From positions 124,001-188,000 of the IMG/VR virus record IMGVR_UViG_3300020147_000065: a DNA stretch of 64,000 nt. The stretch is one strand, 5' to 3'. Shown here piece by piece: positions 18,035-58,137 of this stretch. Position 1 is the stretch's first letter. Each line of letters starts with the position of its first letter. A program made the position numbers and the translations under genes. The notes beneath the pieces are model-generated. The model did not search any database and was not told the DNA's origin. It was given only the letters and a program-made list of their open reading frames with translations.

Positions 18035-18060
18035 AGGGGGAGGCCCGAAGACCTCCCCCG
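18035..18060 (-). terminator. Hairpin downstream of the major capsid gene
   Basis: GGGGGAGG...CCTCCCCC inverted repeat just after the MCP stop; no clear U-tract. Confidence 0.45.
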
Positions 18061-51307: not shown

Positions 51308-51391
51308 GCTCTAAGTATACCAAAAAGCTATCCACGGGGCAAGGTCTGCCCCCCCCTTGCATTTAGATACGATTTAGAGTATCCTTTAATC

Positions 51392-51634
51392 ATGGACGAA
51401 CTAATCAGAGATAACGGGAAGCTGCGCCCGTGTAAAGGGAATTTCCAAAAGATGACAATTCCACAAATTATCTGGGAATTTCAAATCAAGCAGGGTCAGT
51501 TCTGGGACGGTTTTACTTATGTTGATTACTGGGATATTCGTAACATTCTCTTAGTCGTCATCTTTGTTGCGCTGTTGCCCGTTTCTCTACCATTCTGCCT
51601 CTACATGAGAGCAAGGAGCCAAAAGAATTACTAA
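51392..51634 (+). CDS. Small membrane protein (leaderless)
   Basis: MDELIRDNG... with C-terminal TM segment. Confidence 0.6.
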   Translation: MDELIRDNGKLRPCKGNFQKMTIPQIIWEFQIKQGQFWDGFTYVDYWDIRNILLVVIFVALLPVSLPFCLYMRARSQKNY

Positions 51635-51816
51635 TGACACCTGAAGAACAAGACCGTTTCGCTAAGGAATGGGCTGAATACATTAAAGCTGATACTGAGT
51701 ATCAAGACCGGAAATTTAAAGCATCAATCGCCCCGCAGTGGGCGGGGCTTATCGGTTCTGTTATACTCTGTGGTGTGTTTATTTGGTTGTTTTGGTTGAC
51801 AACACCGAAAGGATAA
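51634..51816 (+). CDS. Small membrane protein
   Basis: TAATG coupling; C-terminal TM segment. Confidence 0.6.
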   Translation: MTPEEQDRFAKEWAEYIKADTEYQDRKFKASIAPQWAGLIGSVILCGVFIWLFWLTTPKG

Positions 51817-52158
51817 TATGAGCTTCCAACAAGATTTATACAACGACCAGCAGGAAATGTATCGCAGGATACATCGTGCGCGAATACACGGTTTCATTAT
51901 CGGTATAATTATAGCCGGACTAATTGTGGTTATCGTGGGTGCCCTCGTTGGCACCCACTAATGCCCCCCCCCCCTGACAAAGTAAATAATTATTTGTATA
52001 ATAAAGATATGACAAAGAGAAGATTAGGGTTAATTATCACACTTTTGATATTGTGGATTATTGTCGGAATAAGCATTTTCTTATATCGGCAAAGTATGGG
52101 TATCCCTGTTTAATGCCCCCCCTTGTAGCAAAGTAAGAACTTTGTTACAATTTATTAT

Positions 52159-52314
52159 ATGAAAAGAAAAGGTTTTACCGTCATCGAACTGCTTGTCGTA
52201 ATTGCTATCTGCGCGATTCTCATTTCTGTCATCGTTACCGGCGTTCAACGTGCGCGTGGTGGAGCAACCCAAAGCCAGGAGCGCGTAGTCCCCCGTTTTC
52301 AGCCTCAACGCTGA
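52159..52314 (+). CDS. 51-aa type IV prepilin-like peptide (not in ORF track)
   Basis: MKRKG^[28 protein letters not shown]: basic leader, G(-1) F(+1) E(+5), hydrophobic helix. Confidence 0.85.
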
Positions 52315-52373
52315 GCGGCGGGGCTTGCCCCCCCCCCTTGCTCCCTTACTAACTAATTCGTTATAATCTTAGT

Positions 52374-52757
52374 ATGTCACGATACAAGAAGTCAATGGGA
52401 ACATGGAAAGAGATTTGTATTTGTATTAGAGGCGCATTTATCAATTTTGACGTTGTGCAAGCCACGGGACAAGTCTTTGATTTGTATTGTGATATTCATA
52501 CTCACGTTGACGCTTACAGTGAAAAAATCGAGGGTGAAAAAGAACTGAACTGGAAAGTGGGTAAGAACTCATTATTCAAACACTGTCCAAAGAAGAAAAT
52601 AGCGAAACACATCAAACGACTCTTTGAGTCCGATGATATTATGCTGTTTCCTTATCTCGATACAGATGATAAAGAAGCAGTTAAAGATGCAGCAGAAGAT
52701 AGACAATTTCTCGAAAAGATGGCTCAGTTCTACGGGATTACACTCCCGGAGGACTGA
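52374..52757 (+). CDS. Cassette gene, hypothetical (leaderless)
   Basis: TATAAT-6-ATG. Confidence 0.7.
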   Translation: MSRYKKSMGTWKEICICIRGAFINFDVVQATGQVFDLYCDIHTHVDAYSEKIEGEKELNWKVGKNSLFKHCPKKKIAKHIKRLFESDDIMLFPYLDTDDKEAVKDAAEDRQFLEKMAQFYGITLPED

Positions 52758-53867: not shown

Positions 53868-54290
53868 ATGAGCAAAACAAAAGTAACCCCGAACAGCGTA
53901 GCATTCAGCGCGTTGCAGGAAGTTGTCAAAGTTGGTAACACGAAACTGAAAGTTCTTTTCGTTGCCGAACGCGGCGTCCACGGTGCCGAAACCTACTGGA
54001 ACGACGAAATGCGCGGCAATGTCGGCAAAGAACTGACCGTGAGAGATTCCGACGCGAGCAGCAACGAATTTCAGCTTTCCGACGATTTCTGGTATCCTGC
54101 AATCTCCTTGTTTGCTGAACCCAAACAGCCGGTAGAAGTGTCGCTGCCTGATTACACGGCGACGGTGTATCCTACCCATCTCCAAGTTGGTTATCAGGAA
54201 ATCACCAAAGAAATGGTTCTGGCAATCGTCAAGGGTGGACTGGATACGGGCTTCCTCTCCACATCAGATTTGGAGGGTCTGAATAAATAA
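53868..54290 (+). CDS. Paralog family C protein, copy 1
   Basis: GxHG...W...M...G...WYPAxxL and LPDYTA...VGxQxxTKEMxLxIV...GF motifs. Confidence 0.85.
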   Translation: MSKTKVTPNSVAFSALQEVVKVGNTKLKVLFVAERGVHGAETYWNDEMRGNVGKELTVRDSDASSNEFQLSDDFWYPAISLFAEPKQPVEVSLPDYTATVYPTHLQVGYQEITKEMVLAIVKGGLDTGFLSTSDLEGLNK

Positions 54291-54375
54291 GCCCCGGCTC
54301 CCTTCGGGGAGCTTTGCCCCCCCTTGCGCACAGCTCTAATCTTCTGTATAATTATTAGTAATAAGGAGGCCAACG

Positions 54376-54645
54376 ATGCCTAAATCAATGTTTCGTCCAT
54401 CGGATGTAATGGACAACGCGCATTTCAATGACCACACTAAGGTCTTGACTGTGACGTTTCAGAGTGGTTCGGTTTACGAGTATGAGAATGTGCCTGAGCG
54501 CGTTTTCAATCGTTTAAACGCCGCTCCTTCTAAGGGACAGTTCTTTAATCAGAACATCCGTAATAAATACGCATTTAAGTGTGTGTTTAAACCCGCTAAG
54601 ACAACTACAGCGCCGCAGGTTCAGCCCGTGGCTGTCACTGTCTAA
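54376..54645 (+). CDS. KTSC domain protein
   Basis: LTVTFQSGSVYEYENVPERVFNRLNAAPSKGQFFNQNIRNKY; AAGGAGG SD. Confidence 0.9.
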   Translation: MPKSMFRPSDVMDNAHFNDHTKVLTVTFQSGSVYEYENVPERVFNRLNAAPSKGQFFNQNIRNKYAFKCVFKPAKTTTAPQVQPVAVTV

Positions 54646-54742
54646 TGTTCCTCCTTACCGGGAAACGGAGGCTTCCGGGCCTCCGTTTCTTCGGTCTGCC
54701 CCCCCCTTGTCACAAGTAAATTAAAACGATATAATCTATTAC

Positions 54743-55159
54743 ATGAGTGAAACAAACAACGTGAACATTGCTGAACTGAGCCTGAACCAAATTGCATTCT
54801 TAAAGCTCGGCCTCAAAGAAGGCGACACCGTAAAGGTTGTTGCTAAAGTGCCAGAAGGCACACACGGTTCTGATATTTACTGGGAAACGAGTATGACCCG
54901 TAAAATCGGTAAAACCCAACGAGTAGTAGGTGCGCGGAACCATAGCCGAATCGAACTCGAAGATGGGTATTACTACCCTGCCCTCGCGCTGGAAAAAGTG
55001 AAAGTTGTCAAGGAAATTCGGCTCCCTGACTACACCGCTTTAGTCAGCGAAGATGGTGTATCCGTGGGTTGCCAAAACCTCACCAAAGAAATGGTGTTGG
55101 GTATCGTAAAAGCCGCAGTGGAAACGAACTTCATTTCACAGGAGGACTTGGAGTTCTAA
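54743..55159 (+). CDS. Paralog family C protein, copy 2
   Basis: Family C motifs. Confidence 0.85.
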   Translation: MSETNNVNIAELSLNQIAFLKLGLKEGDTVKVVAKVPEGTHGSDIYWETSMTRKIGKTQRVVGARNHSRIELEDGYYYPALALEKVKVVKEIRLPDYTALVSEDGVSVGCQNLTKEMVLGIVKAAVETNFISQEDLEF

Positions 55160-55233
55160 GCCGGGAGCCGTCGAAAGACGGCGACCTGCCCCCCCCCTTG
55201 TCACTACTCAAGAATAACAGTAAAATATATTCC

Positions 55234-55653
55234 ATGAGTGATAAAGTAAAGACAATGAATGATGTGGCTTTCGAGTTTCTCAATGAGAAATTCAAAGTTG
55301 GCGACAAAGTGCGAGTCACCATGCGGGTTGACTCTGGTGTGCAGGGTAATCGAATTGACTGGCTTGAGGGAATGGAAGAGGCTCTCAATTCGGGACTTCA
55401 CACTATTCTGGATACCAACGAGTCGTATGGTGCGTTCCGACTGAGTTGTGGTTACTGGTTCCCGGCGTTGGCAATCAGCTCTGATGTTGGTAAAGTCACT
55501 GTCAAACTGCCCGACTACACAGCCGAAATCACCAAAGAAAAAGTCAACGTAGGTTGTCAAGTTCTGACAAAAGAGATGATTCTCAGTATCGTAAAGGCCG
55601 CAGTGGACACCGGCTTTTTAAATGAGGAGGATATTGCCTCACTTAAAGGTTAA
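55234..55653 (+). CDS. Paralog family C protein, copy 3
   Basis: Family C motifs; leaderless MSDKVK. Confidence 0.85.
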   Translation: MSDKVKTMNDVAFEFLNEKFKVGDKVRVTMRVDSGVQGNRIDWLEGMEEALNSGLHTILDTNESYGAFRLSCGYWFPALAISSDVGKVTVKLPDYTAEITKEKVNVGCQVLTKEMILSIVKAAVDTGFLNEEDIASLKG

Positions 55654-55732
55654 GCGGCGGGGAGCTGCCTTCAGGCAGCGACCTCTTGCCCCCCCCTTGC
55701 ACTAACCAACTAAAAACGATAGAATATATTCC

Positions 55733-56158
55733 ATGAGTGATACAACAGCAAAGACGGTTAATGATGCAGCGTTTGAGATTCTCAGCGCAACGGTCAAAGA
55801 AGGCAGCAAGGTTCGCGTAATTCTTCGTATCCCAAAAGGTATGCATGGAAGCCGCATCTCATGGGTTGACTCGATGGACGGAAACGTGGGCGTCGGTATC
55901 CACACTGTAACCGATGTAAGCCCTCGCTACGGTGCTTTCGAGTTGGACAACGAAAAGTGGTATCCTGCGGTTGCTCTTTCGGCGGACGCGGAAACCGTTC
56001 GCGTCGCGCTCCCTGACTACGAAGCAGAAATTACCAAAGATGGTATCGTAGTCGCGGGGCAGAACCTCACCAAAGAGATGGTTCTCGGCATCGTGCAGGG
56101 TGCGCTCGACACCGGATTCCTTGATAAAGGAGATGTAGCCACTATTAAGACTTCCTAA
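55733..56158 (+). CDS. Paralog family C protein, copy 4
   Basis: Family C motifs. Confidence 0.85.
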   Translation: MSDTTAKTVNDAAFEILSATVKEGSKVRVILRIPKGMHGSRISWVDSMDGNVGVGIHTVTDVSPRYGAFELDNEKWYPAVALSADAETVRVALPDYEAEITKDGIVVAGQNLTKEMVLGIVQGALDTGFLDKGDVATIKTS

Positions 56159-56238
56159 GCAACGGGGAGCCATCCACGGGTGGCGACCTTTTGCCCCCCC
56201 CCTTGCACCAAAATAAGATAAGCGGTATAATTTATTAC

Positions 56239-56676
56239 ATGAGCGATACACAAACAACCCCCGAACTGACCGTGAACCAAGCCGCATTTAATGTTTTAAA
56301 TGCGAAAGTGACCGAAGGCGACAAGATTCGCGTCGTCCTCAAAGTGCCTATTACCGTGCATGGTAGTGATGTGAACTGGGTCGAAGAGATGGACAACACC
56401 ATCAACAAAACGCTTCGCGTTCGCCGCGTTGACGCAAGCAATGGTTCTTTCTATCTCAGCAACGGCTACTGGTATCCTGCCGTGGCACTCTCCACCGAAG
56501 TAGCAAAAATCACCGTGCCGCTGCCGGATTACACGGCGGAAATCACCAAAGAACAGGTCAACGTCGGCTGCCAGATTTTGACCAAAGAAATGATTCTCGG
56601 CATCGTGCAAGGCGCGTTGGATGTAGGGTTTCTGAGCGAAGAGGATGTGAACCGCCTCGACACCAGAGAAGTATAA
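56239..56676 (+). CDS. Paralog family C protein, copy 5
   Basis: Family C motifs; leaderless MSDTQT. Confidence 0.85.
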   Translation: MSDTQTTPELTVNQAAFNVLNAKVTEGDKIRVVLKVPITVHGSDVNWVEEMDNTINKTLRVRRVDASNGSFYLSNGYWYPAVALSTEVAKITVPLPDYTAEITKEQVNVGCQILTKEMILGIVQGALDVGFLSEEDVNRLDTREV

Positions 56677-56750
56677 CCGGGTGGACTCTTCGGAGTCCAC
56701 CCTGCCCCCCCCCCTTGCGCTGATAGAATTTAAACAGTATAATTTATTCC

Positions 56751-57167
56751 ATGAGTGAAACAAGAAAGACGGTTAATGACGCGGCGTTTGAAATCCTCAA
56801 CGCACAGTTGAACATTGGTGATAGAGTTCGTATTGTCGCCAAAATTGATGAGGGTGTCCACGGCAGCAAGACTGTTTGGACATCTCGCATGAATGATAGT
56901 GTGGGTCAGTTTATGACTATTCGCGGTGTTGAACCTGAGTATGGTGCTTTTCAGTTGGATAACTATTACTGGTATCCTGCCGTGGCACTCGATACTCAGG
57001 TGCATAAAGTGACGGTTAATCTGCCGGATTATTGCGCTGAAATCACCAAAGAAGGGGTGAACGTGGGTTGTCAGAACCTCACCAAAGAAATGATTCTGCA
57101 AATCGTGCAGGGCGCGTTAGACGTGGGTTTTCTCGATGCCGAGGACATCGAAAGTCTGAAAGTATAA
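56751..57167 (+). CDS. Paralog family C protein, copy 6
   Basis: Family C motifs. Confidence 0.85.
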   Translation: MSETRKTVNDAAFEILNAQLNIGDRVRIVAKIDEGVHGSKTVWTSRMNDSVGQFMTIRGVEPEYGAFQLDNYYWYPAVALDTQVHKVTVNLPDYCAEITKEGVNVGCQNLTKEMILQIVQGALDVGFLDAEDIESLKV

Positions 57168-57244
57168 GCGGCGGGGAGCTATCGAAAGATAGCGACCTTG
57201 CCCCCCCCTTGGCAACACTCAATATAAACAGTAAAATATAAGAC

Positions 57245-57643
57245 ATGAACATGAACCAAGCAGCATTCGAGACGTTGAAGGAAACGCGCGGCATCGGTGA
57301 CAAAGTGAAGGTTGTCCTGCAAGTGGACAAAGGTGTGCATGGAAACCTCTTCCGTTGGGATTCCGGTATGACCGAACAAATCGGAAAAGTCTTGACAATC
57401 AAAGAGTTCGATTCTTCGGACAACACCATCCTGCTGTCAGATAGCCGTTATTATCCCGCACTCGCTTTGATGAGCGACAACGGCCCCATTATCGTGGAAT
57501 TGCCCGATTACAAGGCAGAAATCCACGCTGACCGTGTGCAAGTTGGTTGTCAGTGCCTCACCAAACAGATGGTGTTGGACATCGTGAAGGGTGCAGTATC
57601 TGTCGGGTTTATGAGCGAATCAGATTTGGAGGGTCTGCGATAA
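57245..57643 (+). CDS. Paralog family C protein, copy 7
   Basis: Family C motifs. Confidence 0.85.
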   Translation: MNMNQAAFETLKETRGIGDKVKVVLQVDKGVHGNLFRWDSGMTEQIGKVLTIKEFDSSDNTILLSDSRYYPALALMSDNGPIIVELPDYKAEIHADRVQVGCQCLTKQMVLDIVKGAVSVGFMSESDLEGLR

Positions 57644-57720
57644 GCCCCCGCGGACTCTTCGGAGTCCGCCTTGCCCCCCCCCCTTGCACAAGGTTCAAAT
57701 TAAGGGGTATAATTTATTCC

Positions 57721-58137
57721 ATGAGCAAACAAAAGACGTTACACGACATTGCATTTGAAGAACTGGGCATCGAAGAGGGCGACTTCGCTAAAGTCGTCCT
57801 TAAAGTGGACGAAGACGTTCACGGTAACCCGCTCCGTTGGTCGCATGGTATGGAAGAAATGTTAGGTAAGACATTTCGCGTCACCAACATTGATACCAGC
57901 GACAACACAATCGAACTGAACAACGGCGAATGGTTCTCGGCTATTTCGCTCGAAAAGGCAACCGGCGAAATCAAGGTGCAATTACCGGATTACACCGCAG
58001 TCGTAACCAAAGAAGGCATGGAAGTTGGTTGCCAGAAACTCGACAAAGACAAGGTTTTGGAAATCGTTCAGGCTGCAATCACCACCGGTATGATTGACCG
58101 CGATGATGTCGAAGACCTCGACTATCACGACGACTAA
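57721..58137 (+). CDS. Paralog family C protein, copy 8
   Basis: Family C motifs; leaderless MSKQKT. Confidence 0.85.
   Translation: MSKQKTLHDIAFEELGIEEGDFAKVVLKVDEDVHGNPLRWSHGMEEMLGKTFRVTNIDTSDNTIELNNGEWFSAISLEKATGEIKVQLPDYTAVVTKEGMEVGCQKLDKDKVLEIVQAAITTGMIDRDDVEDLDYHDD

What the first reader, a model, noticed from the sequence alone, without database searches (positions are those of the whole stretch)
52159..52314. Phage-encoded minimal type IV prepilin
Seen: [33 protein letters not shown] plus only ~17 more residues, with its own promoter, among several small membrane-protein cassettes (51392-52110). Known: G/F...E5 is the prepilin peptidase motif, and the ELLVVIAI...QxAR form is typical of the expanded prepilin-like families of Planctomycetota, Verrucomicrobiota and Armatimonadota. 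Inference: a headless pilin that jams pilus/T2SS assembly or titrates the peptidase (superinfection exclusion); also a host clue.
Basis: partly seen in the sequence, partly recalled or inferred. Interest (0 to 1): 0.72.

Follow-up and report, generated by a model that had tools for sequence, protein, structure and literature searches.

The report
Phage gene for a headless prepilin
A large, uncultured soil phage carries a real, conserved 51-residue gene that encodes only the membrane helix of a type IV pilin-like protein, probably to interfere with its host's pilus or secretion filaments; untested truncated phage pilins have already been reported in the literature.

Summary
Window 52159-52314(+) encodes a 51-aa protein with a textbook class III (prepilin) signal: MKRKG|FTVIE. 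It passes the curated cut-offs of Pfam N_methyl and TIGR02532 and is the only such match in the 221-kb phage genome.

The gene looks real. It has its own promoter of a phage-specific class (C-tract, TTG, 17 nt, TAnAAT) with the ATG 7 nt after the -10, so the mRNA is probably leaderless. A 50-aa ortholog (78% identical, same tail, same 127-aa downstream neighbour) exists in another metagenome.

Its nearest full-length relatives are 300-400-aa N_methyl+DUF1559 proteins. Named hits are overwhelmingly Planctomycetota, so the taxonomic remark is supported. As a host clue it stays weak: GC is 44% and there is no spacer or prophage evidence.

The phage has no peptidase, ATPase or DUF1559 domain. The product is just the pilin alpha-1 helix plus a conserved basic tail.

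The function is inferred, not shown. Most likely it is an early headless pilin mimic that disturbs host type IV filament assembly, for example for superinfection exclusion.

The kind is already known: PHROG families of about 60-70 aa, and a 2026 paper noting truncated PilA in six virulent Pseudomonas phages. It is therefore a new member of a known, untested kind.

The parts
52116..52122 (+). C7 tract immediately upstream of the -35; hallmark of this phage's cassette promoters
52123..52151 (+). Promoter: -35 TTGTAG (52123-52128), 17-nt spacer, -10 TACAAT (52146-52151). The stretch 52123-52150 is also a 12-bp-arm inverted repeat, so it may be an operator.
   Evidence: inverted repeat reported. 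The generic sigma-70 scan does not call it because the -35 matches only 3 of 6 positions.
52159..52314 (+). CDS of the 51-aa headless prepilin. The ATG lies 7 nt after the -10, so the mRNA is probably leaderless.
   Evidence: ortholog P0002
52159..52173 (+). Codons of the leader peptide MKRKG. The predicted prepilin-peptidase cut is after Gly5.
   Evidence: sequence; HMM alignment to N_methyl positions 2-26; -1 is G in 198 and A in 43 of 241 relatives
52174..52245 (+). Alpha-1N hydrophobic helix, residues 6-29 (F1, E5 of the mature protein). Thr22-Gly23 replaces the family's Pro22-Ala23.
   Evidence: hydropathy 3.22; AF2 helix 8-38; Pro22 in 219 of 241 relatives
52246..52311 (+). Basic hydrophilic tail, residues 30-51, net charge +4. 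Residues 30-48 are 17/19 identical in the ortholog.
52320..52337 (+). GC hairpin (GGGGC-TT-GCCCC) that runs into the C10 tract of the next cassette's promoter. It marks the end of this monocistronic unit.
   Evidence: (fold of 52300-52345, -15.3 kcal/mol)
51392..51961 (+). Three coupled small single-TM genes (80, 60 and 47 aa) under one C-tract promoter at 51349
52009..52113 (+). 34-aa single-TM gene with its own C-tract promoter (51964-52002). Its spacer resembles that of the prepilin promoter.
52374..52757 (+). Next cassette: a 127-aa ORFan with its own promoter. The ortholog's contig has a downstream gene of the same length.

Best explanation
This is a genuine, conserved phage gene transcribed from its own host-RNAP-type promoter as a probably leaderless, monocistronic, probably early message. 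It encodes a 51-aa mimic of the N-terminal alpha-1 helix of PVC-type (DUF1559) prepilin-like proteins.

Shown:
- the motif
- the single helix plus short basic tail
- the absence of any globular head
- the absence of any phage-encoded pilus machinery
- conservation of length and tail in one ortholog

Inferred:
- The protein inserts into the host inner membrane.
- The host prepilin peptidase cuts it after Gly5.
- The 46-aa product enters the host's type IV filament (pilus / pseudopilus) assembly pathway as a subunit without a head.
- There it blocks, caps or weakens filament assembly, or yields filaments that lack the surfaces phages bind.
- The likely benefit is superinfection exclusion, or keeping progeny from adsorbing to infected cells, as proposed for truncated PilA proteins of virulent Pseudomonas phages.
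For: - Motif over curated cut-offs and unique in the genome.
- Helix 8-38 with a low-confidence tail.
- No Peptidase_A24, T2SSE or DUF1559 domain in the phage. The DUF1559 search was validated on a Planctomycetaceae genome, which gave 92 matches. The protein must therefore act on or through host machinery.
- Ortholog P0002: 50 aa, 78% identical, tail 17/19 identical over residues 30-48, followed by a 127-aa gene as here. The profile search gives 123 and 120 bits for the pair and 59 bits for the next hit.
- Own promoter of a strongly over-represented class, with the ATG 7 nt after the -10.
- Cellular relatives instead use Shine-Dalgarno sites, 49 of 76. The gene is therefore integrated into phage regulation and is not a raw capture.
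- Cellular short look-alikes are split DUF1559 genes with the domain ORF right behind. Here the next gene is unrelated.
- No integrase or resolvase, which fits a virulent phage early function.
- Precedents: P-FimU is incorporated into pili and blocks phages, and truncated 60-aa P-PilA occurs in six virulent phages (PMC12952977). PfsE, a Pf-phage protein predicted to sit in the inner membrane, blocks T4P via PilC (PMC8764522).
- Short phage prepilin families in PHROGs, and a 45-aa example in an unrelated viral contig.
Against: - There is no expression data; only DNA runs hold the phage.
- Processing is untested. The complex prediction with a planctomycete PilD-type peptidase gave no answer.
- The host is unknown, so whether it has pili or whether this phage uses them is unknown.
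- Only one ortholog exists and its DNA could not be retrieved, so no dN/dS could be calculated.
- The C-terminal tail is as basic (+4) as the leader side (+3). The positive-inside rule therefore does not fix the topology.
- Four neighbouring small TM proteins without any pilin motif suggest a general membrane-acting module.
Confidence: 0.45

Rival explanations
1. It is a generic small membrane protein. The prepilin-like N-terminus serves only as a membrane anchor. The protein acts, like its four TM neighbours, on something other than pili, for example membrane potential, DNA-injection block (as with T4 Imm/Sp), or a transporter.
For: - It sits in a run of five single-TM mini-proteins among ORFan early-type cassettes.
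- The basic tail is ambiguous for topology.
- There is no evidence of processing.
Against: - The complete peptidase motif (basic leader, G-1, F+1, E+5) is kept in both orthologs. A mere anchor would not need E5 or the G/A-F junction.
- None of the neighbours has the motif.
Confidence: 0.2
2. It is a functional pilin rather than a poison. It would be incorporated benignly, remodelling the filament as P-FimU does. Alternatively it would work like Geobacter PilA-N, supplying the core helix while a separate host protein supplies the head in trans.
For: - The closest solved chains are Geobacter 'Geopilin domain 1' proteins, natural head-less pilins.
- Split DUF1559 genes (47 aa + 254 aa) recur in cellular contigs.
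- P-FimU is incorporated without loss of pilus function.
Against: - No candidate head gene lies beside it in the phage, and there is no DUF1559 domain anywhere in the genome.
- Pro22, kept in 91% of relatives, is lost in both orthologs.
- A virulent phage gains little from building host filaments.
Confidence: 0.15
3. It acts mainly as a peptidase decoy. It would be a competitive substrate or inhibitor of the host prepilin peptidase, starving all pilins and pseudopilins of processing.
For: It has a perfect substrate-type motif and may be highly expressed from a leaderless early promoter (the expression level is inferred).
Against: - A candidate host type encodes about 90 proteins with this N-terminus, so the enzyme is built for heavy substrate load.
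- The conserved tail would be unnecessary for a decoy.
- There is nothing unusual at the scissile site.
Confidence: 0.07
4. It is a non-functional remnant of a captured and truncated host DUF1559 gene.
For: - Truncated or frameshifted DUF1559 fragments are common in cellular data.
- Some end in ARGG..., like this tail.
Against: - An ortholog of the same length with a conserved tail exists in a diverged phage.
- It has a dedicated promoter and a precise leaderless start like about 55 other genes.
- No DUF1559 remnant lies downstream or in other frames.
- The frameshift-origin test was inconclusive.
Confidence: 0.08

Closest known systems
[quoted passage not shown] 2026, PMC12952977, section 17); short PHROG families phrog_13280 / 10597 / 11263
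   Same: Phage-encoded; only the conserved N-terminal pilin helix, with no head; the carrier phages are not temperate; the same two hypotheses apply (incorporation without phage-binding sites, or assembly block); matches phrog_13280 at E 2.5e-8.
   Different: It derives from, or mimics, the DUF1559 prepilin-like family of PVC bacteria rather than PilA. It is shorter (51 aa; 46 mature). It has a conserved basic tail and lacks Pro22. The phage is an unrelated soil jumbo phage. None of these proteins, this one included, has been tested.
Prophage FimU-like minor pilins (P-FimU; PMC12952977)
   Same: A phage-encoded pilin-family protein that enters the host pilus pathway and protects against pilus-binding phages.
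   Different: P-FimU is full-length, folded, temperate-phage encoded, and does not impair the pilus. This protein has no globular domain.
DUF1559 / SBP_bac_10 (PF07596) prepilin-like proteins of Planctomycetota and relatives
   Same: The first ~40 residues are 55-63% identical, including the VQxAR junction. The best named hits are Planctomycetota.
   Different: It lacks the whole ~270-residue DUF1559 domain, has Thr-Gly instead of Pro-Ala at positions 22-23, and uses a leaderless phage promoter instead of a Shine-Dalgarno site.
Geobacter PilA-N ('Geopilin domain 1', PDB 7TGG, 9EGP)
   Same: A naturally head-less type IV pilin. It is the best match among solved structures, E about 8e-4.
   Different: It is cellular and larger, and works together with a separate PilA-C encoded next to it (my own knowledge of the 7TGG work). 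No such partner is present here.
Small phage inhibitors of type IV pili: PfsE (binds PilC), Tip, Aqs1 (bind PilB)
   Same: Small phage proteins that suppress pili and give superinfection exclusion. PfsE is predicted to be an inner-membrane protein (PMC8764522).
   Different: There is no sequence relation, and none of them carries a prepilin motif. The analogy is functional only.

Membership tests
Type IV pilin-like proteins (class III signal peptide; Pfam PF07963, TIGR02532) | HMM match above the curated cut-off | tested here: met
   32.3 bits vs 21.2; 28 vs 16.3; 33.8 bits in the six-frame search
Type IV pilin-like proteins (class III signal peptide; Pfam PF07963, TIGR02532) | Short basic leader ending in Gly (or Ala) at -1, hydrophobic residue at +1, Glu at +5, then ~20 hydrophobic residues | tested here: met
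   MKRKG|FTVIE plus a hydrophobic stretch; the same in ortholog P0002, with Ala at -1; -1 is G 198 / A 43 among relatives
Type IV pilin-like proteins (class III signal peptide; Pfam PF07963, TIGR02532) | Cleavage and N-methylation by a prepilin peptidase | not testable with these tools
   Complex prediction with a Paludisphaera PilD-type peptidase returned 'no answer'; a biochemical assay is needed
Type IV pilin-like proteins (class III signal peptide; Pfam PF07963, TIGR02532) | C-terminal globular alpha-beta head domain | tested here: not met
   51 aa in all; the AF2 model has helix 8-38 and a 13-residue low-confidence tail
DUF1559 / SBP_bac_10 proteins (PF07596) | The DUF1559 domain itself | tested here: not met
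   No PF07596 hit for the protein or anywhere in the phage genome. The search finds 92 matches in a Planctomycetaceae genome.
DUF1559 / SBP_bac_10 proteins (PF07596) | Family-type N-terminus (…LLVVIAI…LLLPAVQxAREAARR) | tested here: inconclusive
   55-63% identity over residues 1-40 and VQRAR is kept. Pro22-Ala23 is replaced by Thr-Gly and the EAARR stretch by GGATQ.
Phage-encoded truncated (head-less) pilins | Encoded in a bona fide phage genome, stand-alone, not a split gene | tested here: met
   Capsid and terminase genes, 36 tRNAs, IMG/VR record; the next gene is unrelated and has its own promoter; contrast the cellular split genes
Phage-encoded truncated (head-less) pilins | Match to the short phage prepilin families | tested here: met
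   phrog_13280 E 2.5e-8, phrog_10597 E 7.7e-6, phrog_11263 E 6.4e-5. PHROGs has no curated cut-offs, and the match covers the universal N-terminus only.
Phage-encoded truncated (head-less) pilins | Inhibits or alters host type IV filaments / gives exclusion | not tested
   No experimental data exist for any member (PMC12952977 section 17)
Flp/Tad (type IVc) pilins, the other naturally short prepilins | Flp motif (G/XXXXEY) and a Flp_Fap Pfam match | tested here: not met
   After the cut the sequence is FTVIEL, not XXXXEY. No Flp family appears among the Pfam hits even at E up to 10.

The most novel reading that the evidence does not exclude
The protein is a dedicated phage weapon against the whole DUF1559 / type IV filament network of a planctomycete-like host. 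It would be a straight, Pro22-less alpha-1 helix with a conserved basic tail that docks on the assembly platform and shuts the system down. It would then be both the first host-takeover factor described for a phage of this phylum and the first experimental handle on what the ~90-copy DUF1559 family does.
Probability: 0.15. Interest if true: 0.7.

Novelty: new member of a known kind. Interest (0 to 1): 0.42.

Why it matters
Head-less phage pilins have been noticed in PHROG families and in one 2026 paper, but never tested. This example shows that the idea recurs far outside Pseudomonas phages. It occurs in an unrelated soil jumbo phage, built on a different parent family, and with features that can be tested directly: a conserved tail and the loss of the Pro22 kink.

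If it does block assembly, it would be a simple genetic tool to switch off type IV filaments or DUF1559 systems in PVC bacteria, where the role of these massively expanded proteins is unknown. It is also one of the few, admittedly weak, clues to the host of this phage.

Tried and rejected
1. megablast and tblastn against deposited phages found no relatives of the region or of the small protein. The capsid is only about 25% identical to actinophage capsids, which is too weak to be a host clue.
2. IMG/VR scans with the neighbouring phosphoesterase, the 127-aa neighbour and the capsid found nothing.
The ortholog's contig was not recovered.
4. The DNA of the ortholog's contig was not available, so no dN/dS could be calculated.
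5. Laying reads showed that the second soil run holds the same phage at low depth, identical where covered. This gave no divergence and no RNA information.
6. Complex prediction with a planctomycete PilD-type peptidase returned 'no answer'. It is not used as evidence.
7. I tested the idea that the tail GGATQSQ... is the +2-frame reading of the canonical EAARRSQC, i.e. an origin by frameshift truncation. The +2 frame and the native frame match the tail about equally, and neither clearly beats permuted controls. The result is inconclusive and I do not claim it.
8. Host search by BLAST of 20 kb of phage DNA against 401 genomes of the phylum gave only weak short hits. The one perfect 25-mer is a GC terminator hairpin, not a CRISPR spacer.
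9. I tested whether leaderless architecture is a host signature. Cellular DUF1559 genes are Shine-Dalgarno-led, and so are the phage's structural genes. Leaderlessness is therefore a feature of the phage's cassette class.
10. A lysis-cassette reading of the small TM genes was rejected. No lysin or other recognisable gene is nearby.

Full report
**What is there.** Window 52159-52314(+) is an ORF of 51 codons. It has a five-residue basic leader ending in Gly (MKRKG), then Phe+1 and Glu+5, about 24 hydrophobic residues, and a 22-residue hydrophilic, basic tail. It passes the curated thresholds of Pfam N_methyl (32.3 vs 21.2 bits) and TIGR02532 (28 vs 16.3 bits). A six-frame search of the entire genome with that model finds this place and no other (E 8.3e-9). 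A motif scan of all 2166 ORFs agrees. The match is therefore not a chance product of scanning many ORFs. An AlphaFold2 model built on a small alignment is one helix (residues 8-38) with a low-confidence tail. That is the pilin alpha-1 helix and nothing else.

**The genome.** The window lies in a 221,108-bp single contig of 43.8% GC. It is an IMG/VR virus record that CheckV estimates to be 89% complete.
- It has a major head protein, a large terminase and 36 tRNA genes.
- It has no integrase or resolvase, so it is most likely a virulent jumbo phage.
- It has no close relative among deposited phages or in IMG/VR.
- It comes from a soil metagenome and is present at low depth in a second soil run.
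- It encodes no prepilin peptidase, no T2SS/T4P ATPase and no DUF1559 domain. The DUF1559 search was validated on a Planctomycetaceae genome, where it finds 92 matches.

Whatever the small protein does, it must act on or through host machinery.

**Is it a real gene?** Four lines of evidence say yes.
1. It has a dedicated promoter of a phage-specific class: a run of 7-11 C, TTGnnn, about 17 nt, then TAnAAT. The motif gives 14 distinct sites in the window against 0.01 expected, and about 75 genome-wide. In roughly 55 of these, an ATG that opens an ORF of 50-370 codons lies exactly 6-7 nt after the -10. For this gene the layout is C7-TTGTAG-17-TACAAT-7-ATG. These are best read as monocistronic, leaderless cassettes. 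The phage's structural genes use AGGAG-type ribosome-binding sites instead.
2. The exhaustive search of 1.84 billion representatives finds one full-length homolog, P0002. It is 50 aa and 78% identical, and residues 30-48 of the tail are 17/19 identical. It lies on a JGI contig and is followed by a 127-aa gene, as here. A profile of the two scores them at 123 and 120 bits, with the next protein at 59 bits.
3. Short N_methyl-only ORFs in cellular genomes turn out to be split DUF1559 genes, with the domain ORF directly behind. Here the next gene is an unrelated ORFan with its own promoter.
4. Cellular relatives are Shine-Dalgarno-led (49 of 76) and not leaderless (1 of 76). The phage copy is therefore fully embedded in phage regulation.

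I could not obtain the ortholog's DNA, so there is no dN/dS. There is also no RNA evidence.

**Where it comes from.** The most similar proteins share only residues 1-40 (55-63% identity) and are 260-400 aa long, both in viral contigs and in cellular genomes. Those tested carry N_methyl plus PF07596 (DUF1559 / SBP_bac_10).
- In the named genome collection, the top ~47 rows are all Planctomycetota, followed by Verrucomicrobiota and Lentisphaerota.
- All hits named by their source are planctomycetes.
- The Atlas look-alikes agree, as a lead only.

Caveats apply. As a host clue this is suggestive but weak. The phage's GC is low for most of that phylum, though some of the fetched loci are 42-49% GC. 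A spot search for spacer-like or prophage-like matches found nothing. A near-complete tRNA set would fit a phage whose composition differs from its host, but that is inference.

**Distinctive residues.** Among 241 retrieved N-termini, Pro22 of the mature protein is present in 219. The phage protein and its ortholog both have Thr22-Gly23. Ala at -1, as in the ortholog, occurs in 18% of relatives and is thus within the family's range. The tail is as conserved as the membrane helix, which suggests that it has a partner. The tail carries net +4 and the leader side +3, so the positive-inside rule does not settle the topology.

**Mechanism.** The best-supported reading has three steps: early expression, membrane insertion and cleavage by the host peptidase, and entry into the type IV filament assembly pathway as a subunit with no head. 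There it would block or weaken assembly, or yield filaments without phage-binding surfaces. Only the anatomy is shown; every functional step is inferred.
- Sztanko et al. (PMC12952977) show that prophage FimU-like pilins are incorporated into pili and block tip-binding phages.
- The same paper reports a family of truncated PilA of only ~60 N-terminal residues in six virulent Pseudomonas phages. It proposes exactly these two modes of action, without testing them.
- PfsE of Pf phages, predicted to be an inner-membrane protein, suppresses pili by binding PilC (PMC8764522).
- PHROGs holds three short prepilin-like families that this protein matches.
- An unrelated 41-kb viral contig has a 45-aa example among phage genes.

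Peptidase titration seems the least likely variant. A candidate host would already make ~90 proteins carrying this same N-terminus, and a decoy would not need a conserved tail.

**Rivals.**
- A generic membrane-acting mini-protein. It sits with four other single-TM mini-proteins.
- A benign or partner-dependent pilin in the manner of Geobacter PilA-N, which is the closest solved structure.
- A dead remnant.

Retention of the full G/A-F...E5 motif in both orthologs argues against the first rival. The absence of any head gene and the loss of Pro22 argue against the second. The ortholog, the promoter and the clean gene boundaries argue against the third.

**Verdict.** The kind is already described, though untested, so this is a new member from a different parent family and a different phage lineage. 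The surrounding array of C-tract, leaderless, single-gene cassettes is arguably the more unusual feature of this genome and is listed separately.

Noticed in passing
window 35800-64000 and beyond (genome 159.8-193 kb; a few sites at 3 kb and 197-220 kb): About 75 promoter-like sites have the form C(7-11)-TTGnnn-~17 nt-TAnAAT. In roughly 55 of them an ATG that opens a 50-370-codon ORF lies exactly 6-7 nt after the -10. This is a very large array of monocistronic, apparently leaderless cassettes. The structural genes use AGGAG-type sites instead. GC hairpins often run into the C tract, so the tract may double as the 3' arm of the previous unit's terminator.
   Followed up: partly
window 53868-58100 (+): At least eight tandem paralogous genes of ~132-145 aa, with similar N-termini and a shared HG motif. 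Each has its own C-tract promoter and leaderless start. No Pfam family was found for the one tested.
   Followed up: no
window 52123-52150 and 51974-52002: The prepilin promoter is itself a 12-bp-arm inverted repeat spanning the -35 to the -10. The adjacent promoter, for the 34-aa TM gene, shares CAAAGTAA...TTTGT in its spacer. These may be a shared operator.
   Followed up: no
window 51348, 52327, 53129: The length of the poly-C tracts differs by one C between contigs of the two soil runs. This is either homopolymer assembly noise or real length variation at the promoters.
   Followed up: no
genome 195.3-208 kb (outside the window): 36 tRNA genes on both strands, covering most amino acids.
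   Followed up: no
L246 154-1131; L247 321-1298; a 97-kb JGI contig: Cellular DUF1559 genes recur in a split form (47-aa N_methyl ORF + 254-aa SBP_bac_10 ORF, 70 nt apart), identical across several samples. This is either a stable pseudogene or a functional two-part pilin like Geobacter PilA-N / PilA-C.
   Followed up: no
P0003, P0004, P0005, P0009: Some metagenomic proteins carry two prepilin N-terminal motifs in one polypeptide. They may be fused or mis-called tandem genes.
   Followed up: no
L078 1309-1446 (IMG/VR 41-kb contig): A 45-aa head-less prepilin is translationally coupled (ATGA overlap) to the upstream gene, in a run of small phage genes next to a phage endonuclease. It is an independent second instance of the kind.
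   Followed up: partly
window 54376-54645 (+): An 89-aa KTSC-domain protein (PF13619, E 3e-20) is the only recognisable family among ten neighbouring cassette genes.
   Followed up: no
window 18036-18060: The GC-rich terminator hairpin just downstream of the capsid gene is 25/25 identical to a hairpin in a genome from the same phylum as the Planctomycetaceae reference (L249). It is not in a CRISPR array and is most likely convergent.
   Followed up: yes
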